Below, piece by piece: positions 13,323-58,580 of a DNA stretch of 64,000 nt. The notes beneath the pieces are model-generated. The model did no database searches, was not told the DNA's origin, and saw only the letters and a program-made list of their open reading frames with translations. Origin of the DNA: Ylistrum balloti (Eukaryota); NCBI RefSeq assembly GCF_031769215.1, contig NW_026782064.1, positions 1,116,001-1,180,000 of the forward strand, written 5' to 3'. Position 1 is the stretch's first letter. Each line of letters begins with the position of its first letter. The translations under genes were made by a program, and so were the position numbers.

Positions 13323-14023
13323 GTTTTCTTTTGTTTGTTTGTATTTTTTCATTCTACATTAACGGAATAAAACTCTTGTGAAGAAATATGATCAATATTG
13401 CCCTGACTAGCAATATAGACTATCCAAACTAAAAATATAACTAAAGTTACACCTTGTACATTCTTGATTGTCATTCAGTAATATATTTATTAACGAAAGA
13501 TATGTAAGTTGGACTGTGAGATAAGTACACCTTCTCTGATATTATAATGTTTTTTGAGCGATTTGGATTTTCCAAAATTTCCATCCTAGTATTACTGAAG
13601 AGACACAGAAAGAACAAAATGGTTGTATTGTCCAATTCAATGCATTATAAGGCACACCTGTTGATAGATTCCCATTTTGTTGTATTTTTCGTTTATGAGG
13701 TAATATCGGAAAAACAGGTTAGGAAATTGGCCAGTTTCGATTTTCACCATCTCCCTGCTTGTTTTCCACACTTTCGGCCACCAGTACCATTGCAGAGTCC
13801 AAGGAAGATGATGGGCGTAGTATTCATTGATCACTCGTCATATATTTTGCCCATCATTAACAGGATAATTTACATGTTAATTGGATTGATTTACACTGAT
13901 ACTTTTTCATCACAAATCATTTGTTTTATTAGCTTTATTACAAATAACAAACATTGAACTACAAAAAGCGATATATTGACAAGATGCTGGTAATGGAACA
14001 ATATTATTGTGTAGCTGTGTTGT

Positions 14024-17006
14024 TCATGATTTCATTGCAAGGTACACGAAGAGGAAGTAGGTGGCGCTGTCAATGAAGGTTCTGAACATGTGACGATAAT
14101 TCCATCGATCAATGGCACCACGGACCCAAGTTTCACCTGTAAAATAAAGACATGCAAAATTGATACATCAACCATTTTTCAGTGTTACACAAATTTCTTG
14201 TACATAGATCCTACCTGTTTGAACAAGGAAAATGGTTTTTCGTTTTCGGGGAAAAAATCCTATATTTTTTCAAAGTAAAAGGTGTTAAAACATATCACAA
14301 ATCGACGAAGGCCGGAATAATATGTTTTATCAATGTCTACTTCGAATTATAGCTCAGAAATGATCTTTTGTAACACTGAGATGGACTGTTTGGTCGATGT
14401 TTTAATTTTCGTATGCTTTTCAATATAAGTGGTTATTACACATATAACTGTGCTAGACTGTAAGGAATATTAAAGGTATACATTGATACCTTTCTTTTCG
14501 ACCACTCCTTCGTCCAGTAGGATGTTGATCTCCGGGAGCATCATTACTACCGTGTAGACACCTCCAAGTACAAACTGGACGGGTCCAACCAGCCAGTGGT
14601 ACTTGTACTCGGAATCGTCAAGGAAAAACAGGGCCGTCGAACATCCAAATCCTATCAGGCCGATCGACGGCTACACAAGAAAAAGTTGAAACATGTACAG
14701 GCACATATACATACAATTACCCATAATACCTGTATCTTAACGCATAGAACCAACAGGAAAACAGTAATGCTTTATAAATACAATTATTGTGTTTTGATAA
14801 AGAAATCGTAGGATTTAGTGGAACCTGTCTGAATAATGAAGTTACCCCTATATATATAATTAAATAAGATATAATTTCACAGGGTTTCTTTCCTGTTTCA
14901 GTGTTTTGAAGTTCAAATGTACAACAGGTGTTGTTGCCAACTCCTAAAATCATTTATATATGGACTGTCTCTATCTTAGCATACTTTGTTAGTTATTGTA
15001 TTTTTTATTGTCTGTCAATCTTAGCTCACAATTAATTCAAGCACAAAGTATTTTATTAGAATACAATTTGTAAACACACAAAGTTTGTACTAGAAGTTGG
15101 AACCACGTGTAAGAGTGGAATAGTTAACAATATATTATTTCTTTATTGGTGCTATATTTAATCATTATCCCTGGTACATGTACCTGTGTCTTTAATTATC
15201 TACATTTTAATGAAATTGAAATCAAATTTGCGAGTAAGGTAGATAATCAGGTAACATTGCTGATTTACTTATAAATTAATTATCAAGTATTTCTCGGCGT
15301 TGTTTGTAGGGCAGTTAATCCCCTGATAACCACGGATAAGTTATTTAAAAGATAAACTACTAAATATTATGATTATTTCTATCAATTTTAGGTTGTCACG
15401 ATTAAACAACTACGTGTAACCCGCACATGTAAATGTTTTGTATAGTAAGTTGTATTACGTAATTTACACACACCGCTAACAAGAAAAACAGCCGGTTTCG
15501 TGGAACCTGACATTACATCCTGGAATTTTATAACGAAATAACAAGAATTCTGTGTAATTACTTAATAGATGTTTACATTAACGATCAATTGATGACAGTT
15601 AAAACATCCTGGATAAAACCCGTTCAGAACTTACTACGTTTCCATTTTTAGCGAGGGAAGTTTTCTCGTTATAGCTATTAATATGGTAAGGACACTTGTA
15701 CATGACTAAGTTTTCGAGGAAATGATCATCCCTCCATCGCTTTCCCTGTAAAGCCATCGTCACACATCCTTATCGGATGGTTAATGTTAATCAGGAAATC
15801 TTCACTTTAATACGTTTTTCTCTTTTTTTTTTTTTAATTTTTTTTTGAAAGCCGAGTCACATACACAAGTATTTGCTCAAGAATGAATACAACGATCTTG
15901 AACATAAGTTTAGCTGCGATTTGATTACGTATGAAAATGTTTTTTTACTTGAAATAGATTGTCAGACGATAGCACACTGTATTTTTTAGCTGATAGATGA
16001 TATGTACAATGTAGTGTGTGTGTAAGACATCCAATTAATTTTGTATTTGAATACAGAGGGCACAGTCATGTGACTAGATATCTCAATACGTTATCTTTAA
16101 TCTGTAGTGGCAAAAATGATTTGAAGATGACAGACTATGACCGATATAAAGCGATCTGTTATATCCTGGTCCAGAGAAACTTAGAAATCACCTTTACACT
16201 GAAAGCACTTGACAATAGCTCACGGAACAAAAATAAGAAAACCAATAAGATTAAGTGTGGTTTTTATTTTAAGGAATTTGCACCGTGTAACAGTTTTCTT
16301 TCTATCAACGTACATCGACAAAATATCTTTAAAAATATCTAAACTTCGATGATAAAATGTAAAAAGCATGCTACAATTTTAACATTTATTCGTCATTAAA
16401 TAGGGAACGTTTTGGCACTGGGAACAGAAACACATTCATATCCAACATACATGTATTTAGCAAAAACAGATATTTTTATATAATGTATAATTAGAATAGA
16501 ACGAATTGACTTGAGCAAGTCTATACACTATACATAACTTTACAACACGCTATATTGTAACAGAAATACACAGATGGTATGTGCAGGTGTTATACTTTGC
16601 TTGACTTGTTTTAGCGGATTAAAACCTTGACCTTTACTTCTGCTACAATGAATCCGTGGCTACAGATTCCCGATAACACAATTTATAAAATTATATGCCA
16701 GCCCGTGCTCAACATACTACCTTCCCTATGGTTCTTGTCAATATGAAATGGATCATTTTCGGTAACGCAGGGTTTTATATGCAATATCCATGATGTATGT
16801 ATACATGAAACTAATTTCTACATTTGCCTCCTTACCAGGAACTTTTTAGCAATATTAAAGCTGTTGGCCCACTGTTCTCTCTGAGCCTTCACTGGAAGCG
16901 GTCGGCGACTGTAATGCTCCACTCCATTAATATATAATGCTCCACCTGAAAACAGCCCCATCGCAGTCGCTGCTCCAAACTTTAAGCCTTCCACTAAGGT
17001 AAACAT
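14024..17006 (-). CDS. DUF1772 / anthrone-oxygenase-like membrane protein, paralog A, 3 exons, 154 aa
   Basis: Exons 17006-16836, 14670-14490 and 14136-14024 (GT-AG, phases 0 and 1). Protein: MFTLVEGLKFGAATAMGLFSGGALYINGVEHYSRRPLPVKAQREQWANSFNIAKKFL-PSIGLIGFGCSTALFFLDDSEYKYHWLVGPVQFVLGGVYTVVMMLPEINILLDEGVVEKK-GETWVRGAIDRWNYRHMFRTFIDSATYFLFVYLAMKS. It carries the recalled family motifs GLFxGxALYINxVEH, MMLPxNxxL and RWxxxHxxR. Confidence 0.88.
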
Positions 17007-17715
17007 ATTTATGTATCGTTTAAGTTCTGATTTATACTGATCCTGCTGCACTTTTTTGGCGTACGTGAGTGAACACAGCAAACCACAAGTCTCGGTAGTC
17101 TGAATTACGGCAGCGAGTCAATGTAAGTTCGGTAGGCAGAGTGTACCTTTGTAGGCCATTTAACAAATAGTTCTTTCACCGACACAATCTGCTGCACTAA
17201 ATAAACACCAAGGTTTCTTTCCTAATACAAGAATTGTGTGGAGCGTCAAGTTCACAAAAAGGGTAGATTTTATATCAAAGTAGGTCAAGCTTAGAGCTCT
17301 CACCGTGTGCACACTTCACTCTCCTTTGGTTGCCCTTACCTGTCATCGTCATTACCTCGTGAATGATTTGAAATATGAAGGTCATTGTCAACTCTCCCTG
17401 TTTATTTTTGATTACATTCTCATATCATGTCAAGACGTAAGGCTAGTTCCCTTTACAGGAACTTGTCATTCCTCACTGTTGCTCTTACAATACAATGTAC
17501 GTCGTCCTCTTTTCTAACGTACCATCGTCACTCTCCTCGTACATTTTGTACCCGTGATATTGTTATATTTATATTACAACAAAATTATATAATATGTTTA
17601 TAAGAATACATGAAATATATAGTTAACCTAATTACTTATACATCAATATCTTTGCTGTTGCTGATGTGAAGGGAGACTCAAATGTATTATTCATTTCCGA
17701 CATAATTATAATCTT

Positions 17716-19373
17716 TCACCAAGCTGATATTCTAAACAGAATGTCTGATAACTCCATTGATGTTGACGATTGCGTTCCACACTTTGAAACAGCAAGAAAA
17801 CAATACAGCACAACCGTCGTTACGTCTAGAACTCGTTTGATTGTTTGGCGGGAATCCCAGCGATCCATTACAGCACGTGTCAATATGACACCTGTAAAAA
17901 TTGGAATGGAAGTGAGTGACTTATTGGTAAGGGGCAGAAACCAAGGCTCTTCAGCCGTGAAAGCATCATAAAAAATAGTTAATTAATCAATTAATATGTA
18001 CATGTTGATATCTATATATGTTACCAATAGGTTTAACTTTAATTAGACCACCGTGATTGATGGCTAATTGAAGTTGGATGGTGGTTTGACTCCGCTTTCC
18101 TGAAATTTCAAAAGTTATAGTTGACGTTTATTGCCATTCATGTTAATTTTACCATTTTTCCTTATCATGTCATTGTGCATTGGGAGCGATGTCTTTTTCA
18201 GTTTCGTCAAGGCGTACCCGACAACGTAAAGGACGGGCCCGGCTAACCAGCTGTACCGTAATGTATTATCAGCAGCCTCAGCAAAGAACAAAATGATGCT
18301 TCCGGTAACGGGGATGATTTGGAACCACTTAAAATAAAAGCATTCATTCTTGTACAAGTAACCTTCAAAAACAAAAACAAGAACAAAAACAAAACAAATA
18401 ATCAAACAAAAAAGAAAATGATATCTAATCTGTAGTAAAAAAAATTGTGTTTTCTACTATACCATCTGATGGCGCAACAAGTATCAAACGGACGCCTACA
18501 TGTAGCTATATTCCATGATTAGCCATTCTGCTATCCCAGAGTTACTTCCCTTCGTTTCACCCTGTCAAATGCAACAAGCTTAACATCCGATGGGGTCGAG
18601 AATGATGACAAGTGGGCGAGGTTTGCTCTCTGCCCCTACATTGTGTACACTCCGGACGATGTTTACTCTCTATTCCTGAGTTTCTCTTGATATGCATTGA
18701 TGTGTTTGGGCAACAGCACAACATTTGTTTTCTGTGGTCGGAAATCATTCTCATTTGGGTAGAAAATGACAGGTATCGTATTGTGTTATTTTGAAGACAT
18801 TCAAGCTTTACCTCGAGTTAAATGGAGTTAAATGTTAACTTTGTATCAATGACTGACTAGTGGATTAAAGCAACAAAAAACATGAGGCTCGCTATGGGTG
18901 ATAAACCCGGTTTCTCAGTTCATTGGTAACCAAAGTCAACTGATGACAAGTTCGATCTTACACGGGTTTGTTACCAAATGGAGTAGTCTTTTAACATATT
19001 CAATTCTGAAGCAAAATTATAAGCAATCTAACAGCAATGGAAGTATACAATAGAAGGTGTTATACGTCACTAAAAGGAGTTTACTGCATAAGATAGTTCA
19101 GTTATAATTCTTTTGTAGGCCCAAATACCAGTGATTTGTTTTTCAAAGTATATATGTAATTTAAAAAACCCACTTATTTACAGTACTCAAAGGTATCAAT
19201 CCGGCATGTCTTACCAGAAACACACTGCTATAGCGCCAGCGTTTTTTCCATCTCTTTCTCTGTTCATCCAATGGAATTGTCCGTAAATTCCTGTCACTGG
19301 TGTATCTTACCAACCCACCTACACAAAGTATCATCGAAAACGCCGTAGTATACCTTAGTAAAGTCATCAACAT
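17716..19373 (-). CDS. Diverged DUF1772-like paralog B, 3 exons, about 169 aa (start codon uncertain)
   Basis: Exons 19373-19215, 18327-18153 and 17891-17716, with the same intron positions and phases (0,1) as paralog A. Aligned anchors: EQRKRW vs AQREQW, FL|gtaag donor, WLAGPVLYV vs WLVGPVQFV, and DRWDSRQTIKRVLD vs DRWNYRHMFRTFID. The reading frame is intact. Confidence 0.8.
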
Positions 19374-19716
19374 TATGAACACTTTAAACACCAGGGAATT
19401 ATACCGTTGTCACTGTGTAATGGTGGTGTATTCAAGTACGGGGGTCTACACAGGCCGGACAATAGTATCACGTGAATACCGACCATGGCCCATTGATATC
19501 AATGGTGATTATATACCAGAATGCTTCATTAAAAGACATACAAGATTTCAGATGAGATTAGTTCACAATCAATGGTGAAACGACGTGTATGTTGCACATA
19601 TTGAGATTTCAGAATGTAGTGATTCAATTAAGGGAGATCTAATGGAATCCTACCATACTATTACCGAGAGTAAGCCTCGACTTGCCAAATAAGTCGAACA
19701 AAATGGTGTAGCTGAG

Positions 19717-22656
19717 ATGGACGAAAGGAAATACCGATGGTGTGTGGTCAACTTGCTGTTACTTCTTGCGGTTGATGGTGAGTGATTGGAAGTTGTGTAA
19801 TATAACACTGAAAAATACTTCAGTATCATCTCGTCATACTGGAACCCTTAATATTCAATACTTCCGCTTATAATGATAAGAATATTCAGAAACCTTGTCT
19901 TTACTATTCCACATTACCAATGGTATAAGATTATTGTTTAATCATGATTAGATCGAACTGTTTTTTTCTGCTTTTTTCAGGTATTGTTTGTGGAAATTCA
20001 ACAGAAGATTCTACGGTAACGTGTGTCTTAGATTTATGTATATTCCTATCTATTACATCTATATAATCTGGTTTAATGTCCTGTTCCTCTATCAGGAACA
20101 CATCTTTCACAAAATTATAATTATTGTAATTACTTTATGTAAGGTTTGTGTCGGTACGTTGTATGTTTACCGGTATAAAAATAGATTTTAAGTATCAAAT
20201 AAACGTTTGATTAAGGACCGATACCACCAATCCGTGTGTAATTTAATTTATATTCTGTAGCGATACACAGTGTTAGTCCATGATAATATCGTACTTGTAT
20301 GACAAGTTACAATTAGTACCAGTTTCATACTAAAATTATAAAATTCAATGTGTGTCGCCATGCATAACTATTATTTTAATCTGCAAATGTATATGACAAC
20401 ATATTAGTTGTTATAAATATGTCAGCACATGGTGTCTAATGAACGCGAGGAGTTGTATATTTTCCTGTACAGCTCAGAATTAATTTTAAACTATTGTATT
20501 GAACAGATAATTTTGTTTAACAAAGGTCGTTATGTCTAGATTTAACCTTTCCGTCAGACGACGAATAAAAAACGACCCATTAAAACATGTAGGTTTGAAT
20601 TAAATGTCAGTCTTTCTTATAACACGATGGAAGATACTGACTGAAAATATAATGATTTGACTCATACAGTAGTGCAGAGTGATGAATATTACTTAGATTC
20701 ACTTGTGTGGGTAAGGAGTCAAATGTCGTCCAAAGTGCATTGTGTAAACTCCTATTTTCTCCATGGGTTATAATATTCGGGGTATCTATTACAGTAAGCA
20801 CATTTTAAGCTGTGAGGAGATAGCACAAAGCAAGTGATTAGCACCTTTATATACAAATTTAGAAGGATTTTTATTAGAACCAGTTATACATAAAATTCAT
20901 TGGATTTTCGTGCACCTGTCTATCTGGTTTTTAACTTGGTTTGGACTCGTTTGGATTTTACTCGGTTGCCTCCTAGGTTTCCATACTTTTGACCCTTACT
21001 ATCACTGACGAAGCCTAGAACAACGAAACAGAGGTATGATGCATTATAATTCATAAATAAATACATGTATGCCATATCTGTATTTAAACATATTATTGTG
21101 CACGTCTGTTTTACAATCTTTGAATGAACTAATTACGAACAAGCCTGATAGCAAGAATGAAATAAAAAAAGATAGAATGAAGGAGTCACGAATCAGGGTA
21201 CAAATAACTGTGTTACAGTCAATGAGATAGGGAATCTGTTTAGGTAGCAGTTTATTTGCATTTTGCCTGAAATTATGAGATATTCAGGTATAGCAGATAG
21301 GTTAGGAAATCTACACCCTTACATGTATATAAATTTATTACATTGATGATAGAGAAATAAAAATGGTGTAAGTCGAAAATTTCCCCTGATTTCTGACATG
21401 TGATTGCCATAGCTACCTACTCAAAAAATGCAAAAAATGTCCTAAAATAATAATAATGATAAAAAAAACCTCCTACTAATTCCAGCATTACACTACAACT
21501 TTATAGAAGGAATTTATTTCTGAACATCTGTCTTAAAATTAAAATCGTACAACACAGTCATGGTAACCCATTACTTACATTTCTGCCAATTCTAACTCGG
21601 AAATCACAACATGACCACAGGTAAACACTATGAAAATTTCACTTCCTGTAAAGCTAGTTTTTGGTGTGTAGACACAGATTTGAGACTGCCCAAATAATAA
21701 TCTCCAACCCGATGCAAAAATATCCTGAAAATATGAAACCCATGTTGTCCACTTTAACATGAAAAGACCAATATTAGCAATGAGTCATTTTTAAAGTTTT
21801 AAATATAACATTTATAATGTTGTAATCTAACAAAGAAACAAAAATTACCCATGGCCACACCTATTAAATGTGTACTGCTACAGAGTAAACAAACCTGCCA
21901 TCAGCTGCTAACGGATATCTGGTGTTATCTGTCGTCGTATGATAAAAGTCTGTTTTGGAGAACTACTCATACGGTACAAAGATTTCAATGACAGATTAAA
22001 GATGACTGCGCCATCTTGATAATTTTACCCTCATCATTGGATGAATCTTGCTTTAAACTATTCTGAATCAAACAAAATACAAATGTGATAGTTCCCTGTA
22101 TGTTTAAAGTTCAAAATACCTATATGATACAATAGGTATGGATTTACAGTGTATTTCCATGTTGATACTTAGATAATTAGATACAACACGTGTGTATTTA
22201 TATATGAATTAAGTAATTGATAAGATTTTAAATATAAAACCGCGTTATTCCTCTGTATCACTCTTCTATAGCTGCAGTGTAGGAAATACAGAAATAAAGT
22301 TAATGAAGTTGAAATCGGATGGTAAAGTGGTTTTTTACTCGTGCGCCGACAACTTTCAAGCGTGTGTTATTTCTTTTTAGATACAAATGAACACCCCTAA
22401 CAAAGGCTGAATAAAAGATATCAATTAGTGATAATATTACGATGTCAATATCAGTCTTTGTGTTCTGCAGGAAAGCTTCTTCACCAGCAACCGATTCATT
22501 GGTATCACCGCCGGACTGGGCACTTTTCTGTTTATCGGTATATATCTATACACATTATGGAAGTGTACATGTGGCAGTCCTGATGATGAAACAGTCGACA
22601 AAAGGAACCAAGTAGGTAGACATCAACAGAACCAGATAGAAGAAACTAGAACATGA
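19717..22656 (+). CDS. Uncharacterised 93-aa type-I single-pass membrane microprotein (signal peptide plus TM), 3 exons
   Basis: Exons 19717-19777 (donor G|gtgagt), 19981-20015 (acceptor tttttttcag, donor gtaacg) and 22471-22656 (acceptor tgttctgcag); phases 1 and 0 join in frame. Protein: MDERKYRWCVVNLLLLLAVDGIVCGNSTEDSTESFFTSNRFIGITAGLGTFLFIGIYLYTLWKCTCGSPDDETVDKRNQVGRHQQNQIEETRT. Confidence 0.78.
21000..21041 (+). ncRNA. Degenerate minimal type-I hammerhead ribozyme motif (Penelope/retrozyme type)
   Basis: atca-CTGACGA-agcctagaacaac-GAAAC-agag-GTA-tgat. The core boxes are intact, atca/tgat can form stem I, stem III is a single C-G pair, and stem II is disrupted. Confidence 0.55.
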
Positions 22657-25064: not shown

Positions 25065-26462
25065 CTACGTAGTAATCTTATTAATAATTCCCACTTCATT
25101 GATATCGTTACCAGCCCAATGTGACTCCTCTTCCAGCTCTTCTAAATATCTTTTGCCACTCTTCCCCCGATGTGACTTCACGGGTGAGTCTCTGGTGGAA
25201 GAAGGTGGCGTACGCACAACCATGTATTCGTCTAAATCTCTGTGAAGAGCGATGTCCGAGTATTTTCCACTGACATGTGACCTACGGGTCTTTTGCCCGT
25301 TAGATTCAAACATCATTTCTAAAAGGAGTTGCTCCGATGATGCACCTCGCGGCAAATTTTCAAGGACTTTCTCTGAATCAGACATGGTCTCATTTGACAT
25401 ATTTGCTATTTTCTGAACTGATTTCATATCTAAATTTTGTGTTCTGACAGCGACCTGTCTTTCCCTGTGTTTCAGGAGTCTATAGGGGTTATTGAAGTAA
25501 CGTATTCCTTTCTTAGCAAACGATTTATTGTTTTTAGGGAAGTCACTACCGTTATCTGCAGCAATTGTTACCTCCTGGGGGTCATTATTGATATGTAAGA
25601 AAGCTGACCCGCTTTGATTAGGTTGGCTTGTTTGATTAGGAGTGGAAGACGTTCCATCAGTTTCCCTCTTGTCTTCTTTCGACATTCTTGAATTATTCTT
25701 CGAAATTACGAAATCTCCACTGACGGTGGAAGAAAGGCCAAGACTTAGGCCGTTGACAGGTTTGAAACTTCTTCCTTTTAATTCAAAAGAAGATTTCGAT
25801 TTATCCACTGTGGACGGTCTCATGGCCGGAAGTGTTACGCTCTCACTAGCAGAGGAGGGAACGGAAATGAAAGATGATGAATGTATACTTCTGGTGTCTT
25901 TGAAATCAGTTTTTGCAGACGAATTGTCACCATTTTGTTTTTCTGTTGTTTTCCATGTAGGTTCACTACGAGCTCTGGTTCTAATATTATGGCGCGCCCG
26001 ATATATCTCATGCGCCGATGTTTTAAAGCTCCCCACTCGTTGGTCACTAAAGTACTTAACGAATGACTTTGGGGAATAACCATTTAGCGGCTGTCCACAA
26101 AGAACAAATTTAGGTCGGTCGTCAACAACGGTCCCTTCACTAGTTATATATGGAGAATCCATTGTTGATATTCCAAAATTGGCGTGCTGAATTCTGTTTA
26201 GGAAGTCCATACGTCTGGTGATATGACTAGGTCCGGCTGGCATCTGCTCCAACGCTTTCCTGTTCGCCTTGCGCAAGATAAACTCATACGACCTGTCAAC
26301 AGCTGCCACAGTTGGATTTGTCGCTCTGTTTGCTTTTGACATTGACAACAACGGTGACGTCGGTGTGTTCCGGGGAGCTGGAGTCCCCTTCACTTTCAAT
26401 CTATCAACCGTGCCTTGTTTCTTCATCTTTCTGTCTGGTTGCATGCCTAAGTAAATTGTCAT
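25065..26462 (-). CDS. Uncharacterised 465-aa Ser/Lys/Arg-rich protein, single coding exon
   Basis: 1.4-kb open frame in AT-rich DNA. An in-frame TAG lies immediately before the ATG, a splice acceptor (tacattacag) lies about 20 nt upstream, and AATAAA on the - strand is at 24985-24990. No recognisable domain. Confidence 0.8.
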   Translation of the reverse strand: MTIYLGMQPDRKMKKQGTVDRLKVKGTPAPRNTPTSPLLSMSKANRATNPTVAAVDRSYEFILRKANRKALEQMPAGPSHITRRMDFLNRIQHANFGISTMDSPYITSEGTVVDDRPKFVLCGQPLNGYSPKSFVKYFSDQRVGSFKTSAHEIYRARHNIRTRARSEPTWKTTEKQNGDNSSAKTDFKDTRSIHSSSFISVPSSASESVTLPAMRPSTVDKSKSSFELKGRSFKPVNGLSLGLSSTVSGDFVISKNNSRMSKEDKRETDGTSSTPNQTSQPNQSGSAFLHINNDPQEVTIAADNGSDFPKNNKSFAKKGIRYFNNPYRLLKHRERQVAVRTQNLDMKSVQKIANMSNETMSDSEKVLENLPRGASSEQLLLEMMFESNGQKTRRSHVSGKYSDIALHRDLDEYMVVRTPPSSTRDSPVKSHRGKSGKRYLEELEEESHWAGNDINEVGIINKITT

Positions 26463-50535: not shown

Positions 50536-52411
50536 ATGATATTTGAGTAATCGAATAGTTATCTTTGTGTATCGACAATCGGTACCATTCGTGGAATTTT
50601 GGGTCATTGTGGAATAACACGACAATGTGCATTGACTATTTAATTAATCAATGATTGGCCTTGACATTACTGTATCCTCATTAGGGAGCCTAATAGCTCA
50701 CGTGCCGGTTGGTTAGTTTTGAAGAATACCAATAATCATACAGCATCATGTGACACCCATGTGACATAGCTTATCTTTTGTTATATAACATAATAAGTCC
50801 TAAAAACAAATTGAAATATGAAAAATGATACGAATCACTTACGTATTTACAACTCTGTTAATCTATAACACGTGAACCCTTTATGTTGTCTTATTGTTAA
50901 GAGGAAAGCAGCTTGTACAGTACTGTATATTGAATTGTACAAACAAAGTATTTGTTGATGTAAACGTAATACCTACGTATAATCAAAGGCAAAACAATGC
51001 TAACTCATAACTGTCAATCTCAGATTCCCACGTATACTCTCAATGTCAATACGTGTAATTTGCATGTTGATTTAACATTTAAACATATCCATTAGAAAAT
51101 AAAAGAAATACGAAATCATGCTAAAATTCTCACTTTATATTTACAAGGTAATAGTTTTTAGTACCAGTGCCAATAGCTATCACCATCAACTTTTATATAC
51201 ATAACAGTTAAACCAGAATAGTTTGAAAAGCGTGTTTTTCTTGAAAGCAGTGTGAGGTTCCATGGTACTATTTTATGAGAATTTTGATATCAAACTGTAC
51301 TCTTTTATTTGGATTAACGATTTTTTTCTACTTAGATAACGAAGCTCTATCTAATCATTTTATTCAGAATGCTTTCAGCACTGATTAATCCAGTCAACAA
51401 GGTATCGACAAGGTATCTCCGCTGTTTATCCGGATGAATTATATAGTGTTTTGTTCGGACCAACAAACTGTCGGATTGTCGAGGAACTGTTTTACTTGAA
51501 ATGACAGTTTTACTATGTTTACGATTACTGAGGATTATCTAAACCGAGGCAGGTCTCGTTACATTACTGTTCTGCACATATAATTTATATATCCGTACCG
51601 GGAGACAACACAATGTGACTGTCTTAAGCATTCAATCTTGCTCGTGCCGATTTAAGTTGATCTTGGGACAAATTTAATGCGAGGCAGTTCATGTGGAATT
51701 TGTCTGAAGACCAACCCAATTTACCACCACATGCCATCGACAAACGCAAGATTCATTGCTTATATTTCTGGTGGTTTGTTTTCAACATTTTGAACGAATC
51801 GTAGTCTACAGTTACTTGTGCGAGTCTAATGGATTGCGTTTTAAGATAAAGTCCGACATTTTAAATTAGAGGACGATCAAACAGTATTACAAAGGCAAAA
51901 TATAATTATGCGACACGTTAGAAAAACAATAGGAAACAACATAATCAAACTGTAATTATTGATTTTGTCAATTTATTTTAGAAATGATGAAAATTGCCCG
52001 ACAGCTACGCGAAAGAATAATGTTTATACTGCGTTCTCCGGTCGTCTCCCACGTCGCTTCCAACTGGGCGGCAGCCATTTTAAATTGTCGCGGAGTGTGA
52101 TTTGTTTGAATCTTTCTCAGTAGCCTTAAGTATCCCTGGCATCAAGAACTTAGTCGGAAAGCAGTGACCTATCAAAGGCGCTCAGTGGACGTTCTTGACC
52201 TTGATGGAAATCGTCATTTTCCTGCAGTGAATGATTTATAAATTTTGTAGCAGACTAAAACATTTGAAAAGTCTTAAGCAGTTATCAAAACATGGAAAAC
52301 CGACGCAACTCTGCTCAAATTAACATAACGTAATATTTTGATTAATCTAATACTTGTACATATTATTTGTCTTTATAAATTCACATTCTGGAACTTCAAT
52401 ACTTTTATTAA

Positions 52412-52630
52412 AAGGTGAAGATACGGGGTGTGCGATTTGATCCCTACTCGGGCGGTTTGTGTTTCTCAGGTGAAGATCTTAGGTGTGTGATCCGATCCCT
52501 ACTCGGGCGGTTTGCGTTTCTCAGGTGAAGATCTTAATTGTGTGATTTGATCCCTACTAGGCCGGTTTGTATTTCTCAGGTGAAGATCTCAGTTTTTCGG
52601 CTCGATCCCTATACTCGGGCGGTTTGTGTT
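52412..52630. repeat. 55-bp tandem repeat x4
   Basis: aggtgaagatcttaggtgtgtgatccgatccctactcgggcggtttgcgtttctc with period 55; it contains a B-box-like gatccgatccc/gctcgatccc. Confidence 0.88.
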
Positions 52631-52689
52631 ATGAAGCTGAGATCACCGACTATCCTGTACTGAAGCGATTCTGTCATGAGAAGAGAATT

Positions 52690-53400
52690 TTACTCTGATT
52701 ACTTTGGATAACAAGCTATGGACCTCCCGCATGTTGGTCAGTAACCAGTTACCAGCTACTGTAGCTACCACTTTAAAATGAGTTGGTGTTATGAGGTGAT
52801 AGCTGGTGGCTATCTGACGGGCAGTCATCGACGAGAACAAACAAACGCCATATGAATGGGAGATAACAGCACATGTTAACCAGTGTGGCGATTTAAGTCT
52901 CATGGGGTTTGAAACATTTCAATGTTCTGGCTTGCTTTCCCTTTCATCATATAGTTATTTTGAGGTTCTCGCGGAATATGTACGGTTGACATGCTCCGTT
53001 CATCTGAATTCAGCTTTTAGGATCATGGCGTCGACAATTCTGGTTTGATTGTGGTCCAGGACTTCAATGTCTGTGATCCTCTGGTGCCATTTGATGTGAA
53101 AAAGTGGAGGCAAACTGAGCTGTTTGATGTCAGTCCTCCATTCAGGTCCAGGTCTCGCCTCCAAGAAGAAGGCTACATGTAGTGATGGCAGTTGTCTTGT
53201 AGACGTTCAGGTTGATGGAAATAAGTAGTGATACACCAGGGGATCAAATGATGTTATAAGATCGAATGATTTACATATCATAAAACGTTGAATTAGTTGC
53301 ACTTGAAAAATAACTAACTCGTGAAAAGCTTTCTCTGCTATCCGGCATACTACTCGATCCCTACTGACAGAGACAAGCTTTGCGATCACTGAGGATTTTC
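52690..53400 (-). mobile_element. RTE-clade (BovB-like) LINE 3' relic
   Basis: - strand translation gives LNVYKTTAITT..LLLGGETWT, IKQL and FHIKWHQRITDIEVLDHNQTRIVDAMILKAEFR*TEHVNR, matching the recalled RTE C-terminus (LLYGSETWT; HIKWQDRITNVEVL..SIEAMLLKSQLRWAGHV). Contains stops. Confidence 0.75.
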
Positions 53401-53426
53401 ATTAAATCGTAAGAGAACAATCTTCG

Positions 53427-54990
53427 CACTGGCGGCGGACATGGTGTGGTGTTCTCTGTCAGGCGGCGGACAGGATGTGGTGTTCTCTGTCAGGAGGCGG
53501 ACATGGTGTGGTGTTCTCTGTAAGGCGGCGGACAGGGTGTGGTGATCTCTGTCAGGCGGCGGACAGTGTGTGGTGTTCTCTGTCAGGCGGCGGACAGGGT
53601 GTGATGTTCTCTGTCAGGCGGCGGACAGGTTGTGGTGTACTCTGTAAGGCGGCGTACAGGGTGTGGTTTCTCTGTCAGGCGGCGGACAGGGTGTGGTGTT
53701 CTCTGTCAGGCGGCAGACAGGATGTGGTGTTCTCTGTCAGGCGACGGACAGGGTGTGGTGTTCTCTGTCAGGCGGCGGACAGGATGTGGTGTTCTCTGTC
53801 AGGCGGCAGACAGGATGTGGTGTTCTCTGTCAGGCGACGGACAGAAGTGGTGTTCTCTGTCAGGCAGCGGACAGGATGTGGTGTTCTCTGTCAGGCACCG
53901 GACAGGGTGTGATGTTCTCTGTCAGGCGGCGGACAGGGTGTGGTGTTCTCTGTCAGGCGGTGGGCAGTGTGTGTTGTTATCTGTCAGGCGGCGGACAGGG
54001 TGTGATGTTCTCTGTCAGGCGGCGGACAGAATGTGGTGTTCTCTGTCAGGCGACGGACAGGAAGTGGTGTTCTCTGTCAGGCGGCGGACAGGGTGGGGTG
54101 TTCTCTGTCAGGTCGCGGGCAGTGTGTGTTGTTATCTGTCAAGCGGCGGACTGGTTGTGGTGTTCTCTGTAAGGCGGCGGACAGGGTGTGGTTTCTCTGT
54201 CAGGCGGCGGACAGGGTGTGATGTTTTCTTTCAGGCGGCGGACATGGTGTGGTGTTCTCTTTCAGGCGGCGGACAAGGTGTGGTGTTCTCTGTCAGGCGG
54301 CGGACAGGGTGTGGTGTTCTCTGTAAGGTGGCGGACAGGGTGTGGTCTCTCTGTCAGGCGGCGGACAGGGTGTGGTGTTTTCTGTCAGGCGGCGGACAGG
54401 GTGTGGTGTTCTCTGTAAGGTGGCGGACAGGGTGTGGTCTCTCTGTCAGGCGGCGGACAGGGTGTGGTGTTTTCTGTCAGGCGGCGGACATGATGTGTTG
54501 TTCTCTGTCAGGCGGCGGACTGGTTGTGGTTTCTCTGTCAGGTGGCGGACAGTGAGTGGTGTTCTTTGTCAGGCGGTGGACAGGGTGTGGTGTTCTCTGT
54601 AAGGCGGCGGACAGGGTGTGGTTTCTCTGTCAGGCGGCGGACAGGGTGTGGTGTTCTCTGTCAGGCGGCGGACAGGGTGTGATGTTATCTGTCAGGCGGC
54701 GGACAGGGTGTGGTGTTCTCTATCAGGCGGCGGACAAGGTGTGGTGTTCTCTGTCAGACGGCGGTCAAGGTGTGGTGTTCTCTGTCAGGCGGCGGACAAG
54801 GTGTGGTGTTCTCTGTCAGACGGCGGTCAAGGTGTGGTGTTCTCTGTCAGGCGGTGGACAGGTTGTAGTGTTCTCTGTCAGGCGGCGGACATGGTGTGGT
54901 GTTCTCTGTCAGGCGGCGGACAGGGTGTGGTGTTCTCTGTCAGGCGGCGGACAGGGTGTGATGTTCTCTGTCAGGCGAAGGACAAGGTGT
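53427..54990. repeat. 31-bp GC-rich, strand-asymmetric minisatellite, about 50 copies
   Basis: Unit ggcggcggacagggtgtggtgttctctgtca; it produces the overlapping SVRRRTGCGVLCQAADRVWCSLSGGGQGVVF ORFs. Confidence 0.97.
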
Positions 54991-55979
54991 TGTGTCCTCA
55001 ATCCTGGTTTAGATTGGTAATTTTTACATAAAGATGTAGAATAAATGAGTAGGATAACCCCAGAAGAGAAGAAAGGACAATATGGGACTTAATATTATAT
55101 TCTATGTATATAACAAACACATAATTATTATTATTTCAAACAAGATATCAATCAATCCTTTCTGATTGTTCTGCGTAGTATTTCTGACTCCGTGATCATT
55201 TTCAGTTACTTATATTTACAGATACAAATGAGTTTATGTTTGCAGTGAGAAATCAATCGAGCTCCTACATGTACATAGGACGGGAGTATGTACCATTTTA
55301 AGTCTTTTTATAGTCCATAATCTTTCGATTAGTGTAAGATTAAGTACGTTTTACCTGTATAAAGTGAAGCCTAATTATTTCCCTACACGAGCATATTGAC
55401 AAGGTATTACGTACTGGACATATTATTTAAATATATGTAAAACTTTAAAGCTTCTCACCTACTCAGGTACGTTCTAAAAGGAAACGTAGTCATTATTTTT
55501 TCTTTTTGTAAGAAAAAGGAATATTAAAATGCATTTAACTTCAAGTCTTCCAACTTTCAAAGTCCATACAGGAATAATGAACTCCCATACCAAACACCTA
55601 AATACATTTATACGCTCTCCAAACGTCTGGTTTTATTTTGAAAACTGGTTATATTTGGAAAGGACAGTAACAACCATAACTGTGTGAACGTGGCTACCTG
55701 AAAACCATTTGTACATATTAGATGTGTCTTATCTGTATACTCTGAACATACACGTATGTGTGAGTATGGAGATGGGATTTACTTGTCCACAAACATAATT
55801 ATATAGAAGCCGTTCACCTATACACAAACTTTGTATATTAAGCAGATTAGTTTTACTTGTTGACAAACTTTGTACAAAATTATGGTGACGTGGGCAAACT
55901 TAGTACATACCATTATTAGATGATATGACGCAGTTTAACTGTCTACAAACTTTTCTTAAGTGAGATAAAATACCACGTT

Positions 55980-58580
55980 TGGCTAGTTATGCTAACCGTC
56001 TTTCGCGCTCTGGTTAGTTATGCTGAAGCGCGGTCCTACTGACCATACTTCGCGCTCTGGTTTTTATTCTGAAGCGCGGTCCTACTGACCATACTTCGCG
56101 CTCTGGTTTTTATGCTGAAGCGCGGTCCTACTGACCATACTTCGCGCTCTGGTTAGTTATGCTGAAGCGCGGTCCTACTGACCATACTTCGCGCTCTGGT
56201 TTTTATGCTGAAGCGCGGTCCTACTGACCATACTTCGCGCTCTGGTTAGTTATGCTGAAGCGAGGTCCTACTGACCATACCTCGCGCTCTGGTTAGTTAT
56301 GCTGAAGCGCGGTCCTACTGACCATACTTCGCGCTCTGGTTTTTCTGCTAAAGCGCGGTCCTACTGACCATACTTCGCGCTTTGGTTAGTTATGCTGAAG
56401 CGCGGTCCTACTGACCATACTTCGCGCTCTGGTTTTTATGCTAAAGTGCGGTCCTACTGACCATACTTCGCGCTCTGGTTTTTCTGCTAAAGCGCGGTCC
56501 TACTGACCATACTTCGCGCTCTGGTTTTTCTGCTAAAGCGCGGTCCTACTGACCATACTTCGCGCTTTGGTTAGTTATGCTGAAGCGCGGTCCTACTGAC
56601 CATACTTCGCGCTCTGGTTTTTATGCTAAAGTGCGGTCCTACTGACCATAATTCGCGTTCTGGTTAGTTATGCTGAAGCGCGGTCCTAATGACCATACTT
56701 CGCGCTCTGGTTTTTATGCTAAAGTGCGGTCCTACTGACCATACTTCGCGTTCTGGTTAGTTATGCTGAAGCGCGGTCCTAATGACCATACTTCGCGCTC
56801 TGGTTTTTCTGCTAAAGCGCGGTCCTACTGACCATACTTCGCGCTCTGGTTTTTATGCTAAAGTGCGGTCCTACTGACCATAATTCGCGTTCTGGTTAGT
56901 GCTGAAGCGCGGTCCTAATGACCATATGCTGAAGCGCGGTCCTGACCATACTTCGCGCTCTGGTTAGTTATGCTGAAGCGCGGTCCTACTGACCATACTT
57001 CGCGCTCTGGTTAGTTATGCTGAAGCGCGGTCCTACTGACCATACTTCGCGCTCTGGTTAGTTATGCTAAAGCGCGGTCCTACTGACCATACTTCGCGCT
57101 CTGGTTAGTTATGCTGAAATGTGGTCCTACTGACCATACTTCGCGCTCTGGTTAGTTATGCTGAAGCGCGGTCCTACTGACCATACTTCGCGCTCTGGTT
57201 TTTATGCTGAAGCGCGGTCCTACTGACCATACTTCGCGCTCTGGTTTTTATGCTGAAGCGCGGTCCTACTGACCATACTTCGCGCTCTGGTTAGTTATGC
57301 TGAAGCGAGGTCCTACTGACCATACCTCGCGCTCTGGTTAGTTATGCTGAAGCGCGGTCCTACTGACCATACTTCGCGCTCTGGTTTTTCTGCTAAAGCG
57401 CGGTCCTACTGACCATACTTCGCGCTTTGGTTAGTTATGCTGAAGCGCGGTCCTACTGACCATACTTCGCGCTCTGGTTTTTATGCTAAAGTGCGGTCCT
57501 ACTGACCATAATTCGCGTTCTGGTTAGTTATGCTGAAGCGCGGTCCTAATGACCATACTTCGCGCTCTGGTTAGTTATGCTGAAGCGCGGTCCTACTGAC
57601 CATACTTCGCGCTCTGCTTAGTTATGCTGAAGCGCGGTCCTACTGACCATACTTCGCCCTCTGGTTAGTTATGCTGAAGCGCGGTCCTACTGACCATACT
57701 TCGCGCTTTGGTTAGTTATGCTAAAGCGCGGTCCTAATGACCATACTTCGCGCTCTGGTTTTTATGCTGAAGTGTGGTCCTACTGACCATACTTCGCGCT
57801 CTGGTTAGTTATGCTGAAGCGCGGTCCTACTGACCATACTTCGCGCTCTGGTTAGTTATGCTGAAGCGCGGTCCTATTGACCATACTTCGCGCTCTGGTT
57901 TTTATGCTGAAGCGCGGTCCTACTGACCATACTTCGCGCTCTGGTTTTTATGCTGAAGCGCGGTCCTACTGACCATACTTTGCGCTCTGGTTAGTTATGC
58001 TGAAGCGCGGTCCTACTGACCATACTTCGCGCTCTGGTTAGTTATGCTGAAGCGCGGTCCTGCTGACCATACTTCGCGCTCTGGTTAGTTATGCCAAAGT
58101 TCAGGCTTGCTGACTGTACTTCGCGTCGTGATTAATCAAACTGTAGCGCACTTGATATTCATGCTACATTGCGATCCTTCCGCCTGTACTGGTTAGTTAT
58201 ACTGAAACAAAATCCTAGTGACAATTCTTCGCTCTTTTGGTTAGTTATGTTGTAGCGCGGTCCTCCCTGACGGTTAGTTATGGCGAAGCGCAACCCTGCT
58301 GACTATTCTTTCCGCGATAGTTAGTTATGTTGAGGTGCGGTCCTCCCTGACTGTACTTCGCGCCGCAGTTAGTTATGGCGAAGCGCAACCCTGCTGACTA
58401 TTCTTTCCGCGACAGTTAGTTATGTTGAGGCGCGGTCCTCCCTGACTGTACTTCGCGCCGCAGTTAGTTATGGCGAAGCGCAACCCTGCTGACTATTCTT
58501 TCCGCGACAGTTAGTTATGTTGAGGCGCGGTCATCCCTGACTGTACTTCGCGCTGCGGTTAGTTATGGCGAAGCGTGGTC
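55980..58580. repeat. 46/47-bp CpG-rich minisatellite (about 45 homogeneous units to about 58095, then a diverged dimeric tail)
   Basis: Unit gcgctctggttagttatgctgaagcgcggtcctactgaccatacttc (47 bp) and a 46-bp ttttt variant. Confidence 0.97.

What the first reader, a model, noticed from the sequence alone, without database searches (positions are those of the whole stretch)
19717..22656. Hidden 93-aa type-I membrane microprotein sharing a short bidirectional promoter with DUF1772 paralog B
Seen: three small exons with strong splice sites join in frame to give a signal peptide (..VVNLLLLLAVDGIVCG), a roughly 15-aa ectodomain with an NST sequon, a TM helix containing a GxxxG motif (GITAG), juxtamembrane KCTC and a polar tail. 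Its ATG is only 343 bp from the divergent ATG of paralog B, and it is absent from the ORF track. Established: GxxxG promotes TM dimerisation and juxtamembrane cysteines are typical palmitoylation sites. Inference: an unannotated small membrane regulator, possibly a co-expressed partner of the diverged DUF1772 protein, making a three-gene membrane module.
Basis: partly seen in the sequence, partly recalled or inferred. Interest (0 to 1): 0.7.

Follow-up and report, generated by a model that had tools for sequence, protein, structure and literature searches.

The report
Conserved scallop single-pass membrane microprotein gene
The three small exons are a real, strongly conserved scallop gene for a roughly 90-residue single-pass membrane protein that gene annotations mostly miss, but nothing ties it to the neighbouring DUF1772 copy B.

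Summary
Exons 19717-19777, 19981-20015 and 22471-22656 (+) have GT-AG borders and join in frame to 93 codons.

The window comes from a scallop (Pectinidae). The same three-exon gene lies at the syntenic place in Pecten maximus, Argopecten irradians and Mizuhopecten yessoensis. Splice sites, intron positions and phases are the same, and the products are 87-89 aa. Over 50 ungapped codons dN/dS is 0.04-0.10 at dS 0.7-1.5. Changes fall mainly on third codon positions, and the introns cannot be aligned. It is therefore a real protein-coding gene.

In M. yessoensis it is annotated as hypothetical protein KP79_PYT07908, with what looks like a wrong first exon. In A. irradians no gene is called there.

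The invariant parts are an NST sequon, a 22-residue glycine-rich membrane helix and the juxtamembrane stretch LWKCTCGSPDD. No Pfam, PDB or FXYD match was found. A weak likeness exists to the last exons of a few larger bivalve membrane proteins.

The link to DUF1772 copy B is not supported. Copy B is absent in A. irradians and only a broken remnant in P. maximus, yet the microprotein gene is conserved in both.

Function is inferred only: most likely a small accessory membrane subunit. The gene is a new member of a known kind and of moderate interest. The joined protein was never searched or folded.

The parts
19374..19716 (.). Intergenic region of 343 bp between the two divergent ATGs. It is the candidate shared promoter and also holds the 5' UTR of the microprotein gene.
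   Evidence: Conserved blocks stand out in the four-species alignment. blastn aligns 19408-19622 to M. yessoensis and 19555-19649 to P. maximus, while the introns do not align.
19490..19505 (.). Perfect 16-bp palindrome CCATTGATATCAATGG in the intergenic region. A TATA-like TATATA follows at 19511-19516.
   Evidence: Read directly. The core ATTGATATCAAT and the following TTTATACC block are kept, with variations, in the other three scallops. Its function is not tested.
19703..19711 (+). Minimal upstream ORF (ATG-GTG-TAG), 14 nt before the main ATG.
   Evidence: The upstream ATG lies at the same place in all four species. ATG-NNN-TAG is kept in three of them. In A. irradians the stop is lost and the uORF runs into the main ATG.
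19717..19777 (+). Exon 1: start codon plus a signal-peptide-like segment, ending in phase 1 with donor GTGAGT.
   Evidence: Equivalent exons of 61-67 nt exist in the three other scallops, each with an ATG, a 10-12 residue uncharged hydrophobic core, a (V/F)D-G end and a GT donor in the same phase. The sequence diverges quickly, as signal peptides do.
19778..19980 (+). Intron 1 (203 nt, GT..AG).
   Evidence: It cannot be aligned between species except next to exon 2.
19981..20015 (+). Exon 2 (35 nt): the end of the signal-peptide-like segment (I-x-C-G) and the invariant NST sequon.
   Evidence: It is 35 nt in all four species with 73-82% amino-acid identity. The same exon with the same borders is used in the M. 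yessoensis annotation, P0011.
20016..22470 (+). Intron 2 (2455 nt, GT..AG).
   Evidence: There is no alignable sequence between species. Its length varies from about 570 to 1700 nt in the other scallops.
22471..22656 (+). Exon 3 (terminal, phase 0): S/T-rich stalk, 22-residue membrane helix rich in small residues, invariant LWKCTCGSPDD, variable polar tail, and the TGA stop.
   Evidence: Amino-acid identity is 81-85% and 34 columns are invariant. dN/dS is 0.04-0.10 and differences by codon position run about 4/3/20. The exon is single copy in its own genome.
19215..19373 (-). Neighbour: first exon of DUF1772-like copy B, divergent from the microprotein gene. It is context, not part of the gene.
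   Evidence: Identity to the M. yessoensis counterpart is 52%. The exon is absent in A. irradians and a broken remnant in P. maximus.

Best explanation
This is a genuine three-exon protein-coding gene that is conserved in scallops (Pectinidae). It encodes an 87-93 residue type I single-pass membrane protein.

Shown:
- The gene structure and its conservation.
- Strong purifying selection on the reading frame.
- Invariance of the NST sequon, of the small-residue face of the membrane helix (G11, A14, G15, G17, G23 of exon 3) and of the juxtamembrane LWKCTCGSPDD.

Inferred:
- The N-terminal 24-28 residues act as a cleaved signal peptide.
- A stalk of about 16-20 residues, N-glycosylated and rich in Ser/Thr, faces the lumen or the outside.
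- The two juxtamembrane cysteines are acylated.
- The Ser-Pro plus acidic cluster is a phosphorylation or sorting site.

Most likely mode of action, also inferred: a small accessory or regulatory subunit that packs its glycine-rich helix against the membrane helices of a larger protein, in the manner of FXYD- or KCNE-type subunits. The partner is unknown.

The terminal exon appears to be a membrane-helix plus juxtamembrane module shared with a few larger bivalve type I membrane proteins. The gene would then be a minimal derivative of such a receptor.

Its position next to a DUF1772 gene is a matter of local gene order and does not indicate an obligate partnership with copy B.

My odds: real coding gene 0.95; type I topology with a cleaved signal 0.75; accessory-subunit role 0.35.
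For: - Exons and splice sites were verified in the window.
- The window is pectinid. Orthologues of the neighbouring 465-aa gene gave syntenic loci in three genera.
- All three exons are present there on the expected strand, with identical phases, GT-AG borders and intact frames of 87-89 codons.
- Nei-Gojobori dN/dS is 0.04-0.10 at dS 0.7-1.5. Third-position changes dominate, for example 4/3/20.
- Only the exons and promoter blocks align at DNA level.
- An independent annotation in M. yessoensis (P0011) uses the same exon 2 and exon 3 borders.
- The hydrophobic core of exon 1 is only 10-12 residues long and its sequence is poorly conserved, as expected for a signal peptide. Exon 3 has a 22-residue uncharged helix.
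- 34 columns of exon 3 are invariant, including the TM glycines and LWKCTCGSPDD.
- Module idea: a Mytilus galloprovincialis 214-aa protein with a partial C-type lectin domain shares IG.xAG.G...LWKC.CGS.DD.
- Module idea: two further terminal exons in the same genome, on C765 and C506, share the design.
- Module idea: the Mytilus and C765 exons both start in phase 0, 10-11 codons before the helix. The start of the C506 exon was not fixed.
Against: - No transcript, ribosome or peptide evidence could be reached.
- No spliced product from public run assemblies turned up in the word search.
- The signal peptide and topology rest on hand rules. SignalP or DeepTMHMM on the joined protein was not run.
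- The cleavage site is ambiguous: after VDG, IxC or CG.
- The M. yessoensis annotation uses a different first exon that lacks a signal peptide.
- No family match of any kind supports an accessory-subunit role.
- The likeness to the larger proteins is short (E 6e-4 over the library, 2.8e-6 and 2.4e-3 in the own genome). It could be convergence on a common membrane-helix and cysteine design.
Confidence: 0.6

Rival explanations
1. One reading: the microprotein is a co-expressed partner or regulator of DUF1772-like copy B (or of the DUF1772 pair). It would be driven by a shared bidirectional promoter and form a three-gene membrane module.
For: The head-to-head arrangement with copy B exists at 343 bp here and at about 595 bp in M. 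yessoensis. Intergenic blocks, including a central palindrome, are conserved. In A. irradians the gene is still head to head with a DUF1772 gene, copy A, which carries PF08592.
Against: Copy B is absent in A. irradians and reduced to an indel-ridden remnant in P. maximus. No DUF1772 exon lies within 4 kb in P. maximus. The microprotein is under equally strong constraint in both species. No binding test was possible because the full DUF1772 proteins are spliced models without a reference. Adjacent position alone is weak evidence.
Confidence: 0.1
2. Exons 2 and 3 belong to a different or longer transcript, as in the M. yessoensis model KP79_PYT07908 (122 aa). That model's first exon lies further upstream, antisense to copy B's first exon. 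The product would then have no cleavable signal peptide, and the proposed exon 1 would be 5' UTR or unused.
For: The only existing annotation, P0011, has this structure.
Against: The 57-residue N-terminus of P0011 is the antisense reading of the DUF1772-B first exon (17484-17645 against 17635-17466 in L006). In contrast, exon 1 as proposed has a conserved ATG, a conserved upstream context with a mini-uORF, the same phase and a GT donor in all four species.
Confidence: 0.1
3. It is not a protein-coding gene. It would be a chance ORF over conserved non-coding sequence, or exons of a non-coding RNA.
For: No expression data are available. It is absent from the A. irradians annotation. Within 40-128 aa, no P. 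maximus protein was found by the word search.
Against: Differences between species fall about five to one on third codon positions. dN/dS is 0.04-0.10 with near-saturated dS. The frames are intact and the splice phases identical in four genera.
Confidence: 0.03

Closest known systems
Mizuhopecten yessoensis hypothetical protein KP79_PYT07908 (P0011, 122 aa)
   Same: It is the orthologue. It lies at the syntenic position between the 465-aa gene and DUF1772-like copy B. Exons 2 and 3 have identical borders, and exon 3 is 81% identical.
   Different: The annotated first exon is another one, antisense to the DUF1772-B first exon. The conserved exon 1 with the signal-peptide-like segment is present in that genome but is not used in the model. 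The protein has no name, no domain and no paper.
FXYD family (PF02038), small type I regulators of the Na,K-ATPase
   Same: The architecture only. From my own knowledge of the family: a protein under 100 aa with a signal peptide, a short ectodomain, one membrane helix with conserved glycines, and juxtamembrane cysteines in a C-x-C arrangement that are palmitoylated in FXYD1.
   Different: The defining F-x-Y-D motif is absent (the stalk reads FFTSN). PF02038 never matched any of the four orthologues even at E 10. No FXYD chain appeared in the PDB profile search. This is not a member; at most it works in a similar way.
Larger bivalve type I membrane proteins with the same terminal-exon design: a Mytilus galloprovincialis 214-aa lectin-like protein (P0015), and terminal exons at G000:C765:47010-47186 and C506:945060-945203
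   Same: A terminal exon that encodes IG.xxG.G in the helix and then LW(K/N)C.CGS(K/P)DD or W.C.CCGS. The Mytilus and C765 exons start in phase 0, 10-11 codons before the helix.
   Different: They have large ectodomains or long cytoplasmic tails. Identity is only about 30% over 50 residues and the E-values are modest. Homology rather than convergence is not proven.
Generic vertebrate small integral membrane proteins (SMIM3, SMIM5/18/22, TMEM52, stannin)
   Same: These are the nearest clusters by language-model features (scores 0.85-0.90). They are short single-pass proteins.
   Different: The scores lie in the range that shuffled sequences also reach. No Pfam model of these families matches the scallop proteins.

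Membership tests
Pectinid orthologue group of KP79_PYT07908 | Syntenic position, on the opposite strand downstream of the conserved 465-aa single-exon gene | tested here: met
   found in all three other scallop genomes.
Pectinid orthologue group of KP79_PYT07908 | Same three-exon structure, phases (1, 0) and GT-AG borders, with an intact frame | tested here: met
Pectinid orthologue group of KP79_PYT07908 | Significant sequence similarity under purifying selection | tested here: met
   Exon 3 gives E about 1e-25 and 81-85% identity. dN/dS is 0.04-0.10.
Type I single-pass membrane protein with cleavable signal peptide | N-terminal charged region, a hydrophobic core too short to span the membrane, and small residues at -3/-1 | tested here: inconclusive
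   The cores are 10-12 residues long in all four species and are followed by D-G-I-x-C-G. Only hand rules were applied. No SignalP was run and the joined protein was not analysed.
Type I single-pass membrane protein with cleavable signal peptide | One membrane-spanning helix of about 20 residues downstream | tested here: met
   A 22-residue stretch without charged or amide residues, with Kyte-Doolittle 19-residue mean 1.8-1.9.
FXYD (PF02038) | F-x-Y-D motif just before the helix | tested here: not met
   The stalk reads E-(S/N)-(F/L)-F-T-S-N in all four species.
FXYD (PF02038) | Match to the family profile | tested here: not met
   No PF02038 hit at E up to 10. No FXYD chain in the PDB search.
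FXYD (PF02038) | Association with Na,K-ATPase | not testable with these tools
   Needs co-purification.
TMEM52 (PF14979) | Match to the family profile | tested here: not met
   No hit for the four scallop exon-3 products. Only the Mytilus look-alike P0015 gives a sub-threshold 14.6 bits.
Bidirectional (divergent) promoter pair | Head-to-head genes with starts less than 1 kb apart | tested here: met
   343 bp between the ATGs here and about 595 bp in M. yessoensis. The transcription start sites are unknown.
Bidirectional (divergent) promoter pair | The pairing with the same partner gene is conserved, and the two genes are co-expressed | tested here: not met
   The partner is copy A at 1.3 kb in A. 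irradians. In P. maximus only a remnant of copy B is left. Co-expression is not testable here.

The most novel reading that the evidence does not exclude
A scallop-lineage microprotein that arose by cutting the membrane-helix and juxtamembrane terminal exon of a lectin-type receptor down to a signal peptide plus a stalk. It would now act as an FXYD-like, palmitoylated regulatory subunit of a membrane transporter or receptor, possibly the ancestral DUF1772 neighbour. That would be an invertebrate counterpart of vertebrate single-pass regulators, with a traceable origin.
Probability: 0.12. Interest if true: 0.6.

Novelty: new member of a known kind. Interest (0 to 1): 0.35.

Why it matters
Small multi-exon membrane proteins are systematically missed by gene finders. 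This one is missing or mis-modelled in at least two of the four scallop genomes examined, although it is among the most constrained sequences in its neighbourhood. It gives a clean, testable example of a lineage-restricted microprotein with an invariant membrane helix and juxtamembrane motif. It corrects one public gene model. It also shows that the neighbouring DUF1772 copy B is dispensable in some scallops. It does not open a new kind of biology unless a partner is found.

Tried and rejected
1. The word search with the 61-aa exon 3 gave nothing. The cause was the length window, because the same search with the 73-codon open frame found P0011.
2. Pfam on exon 3, on all four orthologues and on P0011 gave no family. 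Only noise-level Tweety, Pox_A14 and Coa3 hits appeared.
3. The PDB profile search gave only chance helix matches at E above 0.7.
4. The ESM Atlas look-alikes were generic small membrane proteins and viroporins at 0.85-0.90, a range that shuffled sequences also reach. The structure rows were meaningless for a single helix.
5. The whole-library profile search gave one orthologue, repeat proteins (P0012-P0014, rejected as low-complexity repeats) and the Mytilus protein P0015.
6. The syntenic loci in Pinctada imbricata and Saccostrea echinata have no exon-3 relative within 10 kb. Synteny may simply not extend that far.
7. Looking up the window's own locus in the annotated collection found nothing on record.
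8. PF08592 was not detected in the window by the six-frame genome search. The 'DUF1772' label of the neighbours therefore rests on the A. irradians orthologue of copy A.
9. The homodimer prediction for exon 3 gave no verdict (score 0.02). It is evidence neither for nor against.
10. A literature search for the locus tag found no paper.
11. Everything was done exon by exon.
12. A complex test with the DUF1772 protein was not possible, because that protein has no unspliced reference.
Full report
**1. The observation**

- Exon 1 is 19717-19777 (61 nt). The ATG sits in a G..ATGG context and the donor is GTGAGT.
- Exon 2 is 19981-20015 (35 nt), after a pyrimidine-rich tract and AG, with donor GTAACG.
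- Exon 3 is 22471-22656, after tctgcag, and ends in TGA.
- 61 + 35 = 96 nt, so exon 3 begins in phase 0 and the model has 93 codons.
- The exon-3 frame has no listed ORF, so it is indeed invisible to a mechanical ORF track.
- The divergent neighbour starts at 19373 on the minus strand. That leaves 343 bp between the two ATGs.

**2. Where the window comes from, and the comparative loci**

The long single-exon ORF at 25065-26462 (-) has orthologues at 88% in Pecten maximus, 85% in Argopecten irradians and 84% in Mizuhopecten yessoensis. Pearl oyster and rock oyster orthologues are at about 40%. The window is therefore from a scallop that differs from those three. The genome is 648 Mb and the window is G000:C207:1116001-1180000.

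Looking up those proteins fetched the syntenic loci with 10-kb flanks: L004 for P. maximus, L005 for A. irradians and L006 for M. yessoensis.

**3. The gene is conserved**

tblastn with each exon separately finds exon 3 in all three loci. Identity is 81-85% over 47-48 residues at E about 1e-25, on the expected strand and side of the anchor gene. Exon 2 is found in all three at 73-82%.

Reading the loci and extracting the borders shows an equivalent exon 1 in each species.
- Each has an ATG and is 61 or 67 nt long.
- Each ends ...(V/F)-D-G in phase 1 with a GT donor.
- Exon 2 is always 35 nt.
- Exon 3 always starts in phase 0 after AG.
- The frames are intact and give 87, 88 and 89 codons.

Over the 50 codons that align without gaps (exon 2 plus the first 39 codons of exon 3), Nei-Gojobori dN/dS is 0.04-0.10. 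Synonymous divergence is 0.7-1.5. Differences by codon position are, for example, 4/3/20. At DNA level only the exons, blocks of the intergenic region and the DUF1772 exons align; the introns do not. The exon is single copy in its genome. This is the signature of a translated exon set, so chance or a purely non-coding element can be set aside.

**4. State of annotation**

M. yessoensis carries an annotated 122-aa gene at the same place, retrieved as P0011, 'hypothetical protein KP79_PYT07908'. It uses exactly the same exon 2 and exon 3.

Its first 57 residues, however, come from an upstream exon that is the antisense reading of the first exon of the DUF1772-like neighbour. The conserved exon 1 is skipped. 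I take that first exon to be a modelling error, but an alternative start cannot be excluded without transcripts.

In the A. irradians annotation no gene is called there. The word search found no P. maximus protein of 40-128 aa with this exon. No paper mentions the locus tag.

**5. Anatomy of the product**

This was read exon by exon.

- Exon 1 diverges fast in sequence. It always has a charged start and an uncharged hydrophobic core of 10-12 residues, too short for a membrane span. D-G-I-x-C-G follows. This fits a cleavable signal peptide. The cleavage point is ambiguous (after VDG, I-x-C or C-G).
- Next comes the invariant N-S-T sequon in an acidic stalk rich in Ser/Thr.
- Then comes a 22-residue helix (F/I-G-I-T-A-G-L-G-T-F-L...I-G-I-Y-L-Y) in which G11, A14, G15, G17 and G23 are invariant.
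- The invariant L-W-K-C-T-C-G-S-P-D-D follows, and then a variable polar tail of 24-31 residues.
- 34 of about 55 exon-3 columns are identical in four genera. The strongest constraint lies on the helix face and on the first ten cytoplasmic residues.
- It follows from general knowledge, not from a test here, that juxtamembrane cysteines are common S-acylation sites, that small-xxx-small faces mediate helix packing, and that Ser-Pro with an acidic cluster is a plausible phosphorylation or sorting site.

**6. Relatives and families**

Pfam finds nothing for exon 3, for the four orthologues or for P0011. A profile search of PDB sequences gives only chance helix matches. Atlas look-alikes are generic small single-pass proteins at scores that shuffled sequences also reach.

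The exhaustive profile search of 1.84 billion representatives returns the M. yessoensis orthologue (4.6e-33) and three repeat proteins that I reject. It also returns one weak but interesting hit, P0015 (6e-4). This is a 214-aa Mytilus galloprovincialis protein with a partial C-type lectin domain. Its helix and juxtamembrane stretch read IG-L-S-A-G-F-G ... L-W-K-C-L-C-G-S-K-D-D.

In the scallop's own genome the back-translated motif W-(K/N)-C-x-C-G-S-x-D-D occurs exactly twice: here and at C765:47097. The reversed-pattern control gives 0. A wider profile adds C506:945060 at 2.8e-6.

These extra cases read as terminal exons, each running to a stop codon. The Mytilus and C765 exons start in phase 0, 10-11 codons before the helix, against 9 in the microprotein. 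The start of the C506 exon was not fixed.

I read this as a shared membrane-helix and juxtamembrane terminal-exon module of larger bivalve type I proteins, with the microprotein as a minimal carrier. The evidence is modest and convergence is possible. Near the orthologues of the anchor gene in Pinctada and Saccostrea there is no relative of exon 3. As far as can be seen, the gene itself is restricted to scallops.

**7. The neighbour and the 'module'**

In M. yessoensis the first exon of DUF1772-like copy B lies about 595 bp from the ATG, head to head as in this window.

In A. irradians there is no trace of copy B. The gene faces copy A at 1.3 kb. Copy A is 78% identical in its first exon, and its annotated product carries PF08592.

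In P. maximus only a remnant of copy B's first exon remains. It has several indels and no donor site. No DUF1772 exon lies within the 4 kb available.

The microprotein is equally constrained in all four species. An obligate partnership with copy B is therefore not supported. A looser link with the DUF1772 locus, seen in three of four species, remains possible but is only positional.

The intergenic region holds conserved blocks. Among them are a perfect 16-bp palindrome at 19490-19505, a TATA-like element next to it, and a conserved mini-uORF (ATG-NNN-TAG) 14 nt before the main ATG. These argue that the region is a real promoter and 5' UTR. Whether it fires in both directions was not tested.

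**8. What was tried without result**

A homodimer prediction for exon 3 gave no verdict and is evidence neither way. A complex test with the DUF1772 protein could not be set up, because that protein exists here only as a spliced model without a reference.

**9. Verdict**

The gene is real and conserved (0.95). It most likely encodes a type I, glycosylated single-pass microprotein (0.75). The functional reading as a small accessory subunit acting through its invariant helix and acylated juxtamembrane stretch is an inference (0.35). The proposed partnership with DUF1772 copy B is unlikely (0.1). This is a new, mostly unannotated member of the known class of small single-pass membrane proteins. 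It has no detectable family and is restricted to scallops as far as can be seen. Interest is moderate.

Noticed in passing
L006:17466-17635 (-) against L006:17484-17645 (+): The first exon of the M. yessoensis gene model KP79_PYT07908 is the antisense reading of the first exon of the DUF1772-like neighbour. The conserved exon 1 at L006:16888-16822 is skipped. This is probably a mis-modelled public gene.
   Followed up: partly
window 19703-19711: A minimal upstream ORF (ATG-GTG-TAG) lies 14 nt before the main ATG. The upstream ATG is conserved in all four scallops. In A. irradians the stop is lost and the uORF overlaps the main start.
   Followed up: partly
window 19490-19517: A perfect 16-bp palindrome CCATTGATATCAATGG lies near the middle of the divergent intergenic region, followed by a TATA-like element. 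On the opposite strand that element reads TATAAAA or TATATAA. Both are conserved between genera.
   Followed up: partly
L005:24566-25865; L004:17700-17900: DUF1772-like copy B is absent in A. irradians. In P. maximus it is reduced to a remnant of its first exon with indels and no donor site. The copy seems dispensable or recently arisen within scallops.
   Followed up: partly
window 25065-26462 (-): A single-exon ORF of 465 aa without any Pfam domain is conserved at 84-88% among scallops and at about 40% in pearl oysters and rock oysters. It is annotated everywhere as uncharacterised (LOC117327937 in P. maximus).
   Followed up: no
G000:C765:47010-47186 and G000:C506:945060-945203: Two further terminal exons in the same genome have the same glycine-rich helix and cysteine-rich juxtamembrane design, followed by long Ser/Pro-rich tails. 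The genes they belong to were not worked out.
   Followed up: partly
L004:15960-16220 and L006:17290-17530: There are species-specific tandem repeats. P. maximus has a unit of about 30 bp in intron 2. M. yessoensis has a unit of about 60 bp between copy B's first exon and the conserved promoter blocks, which explains its longer intergenic distance.
   Followed up: no
window 52001-58000: G+C rises to 0.46-0.51 with strong GC and AT skew, against about 0.33-0.38 elsewhere in the window.
   Followed up: no
window 14000-19400: The Pfam model PF08592 did not pick up either DUF1772-like copy of this window in the six-frame search of the genome. Only two weak exon hits appeared, on contig C639. The family label of the neighbours rests on the A. 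irradians orthologue of copy A.
   Followed up: partly
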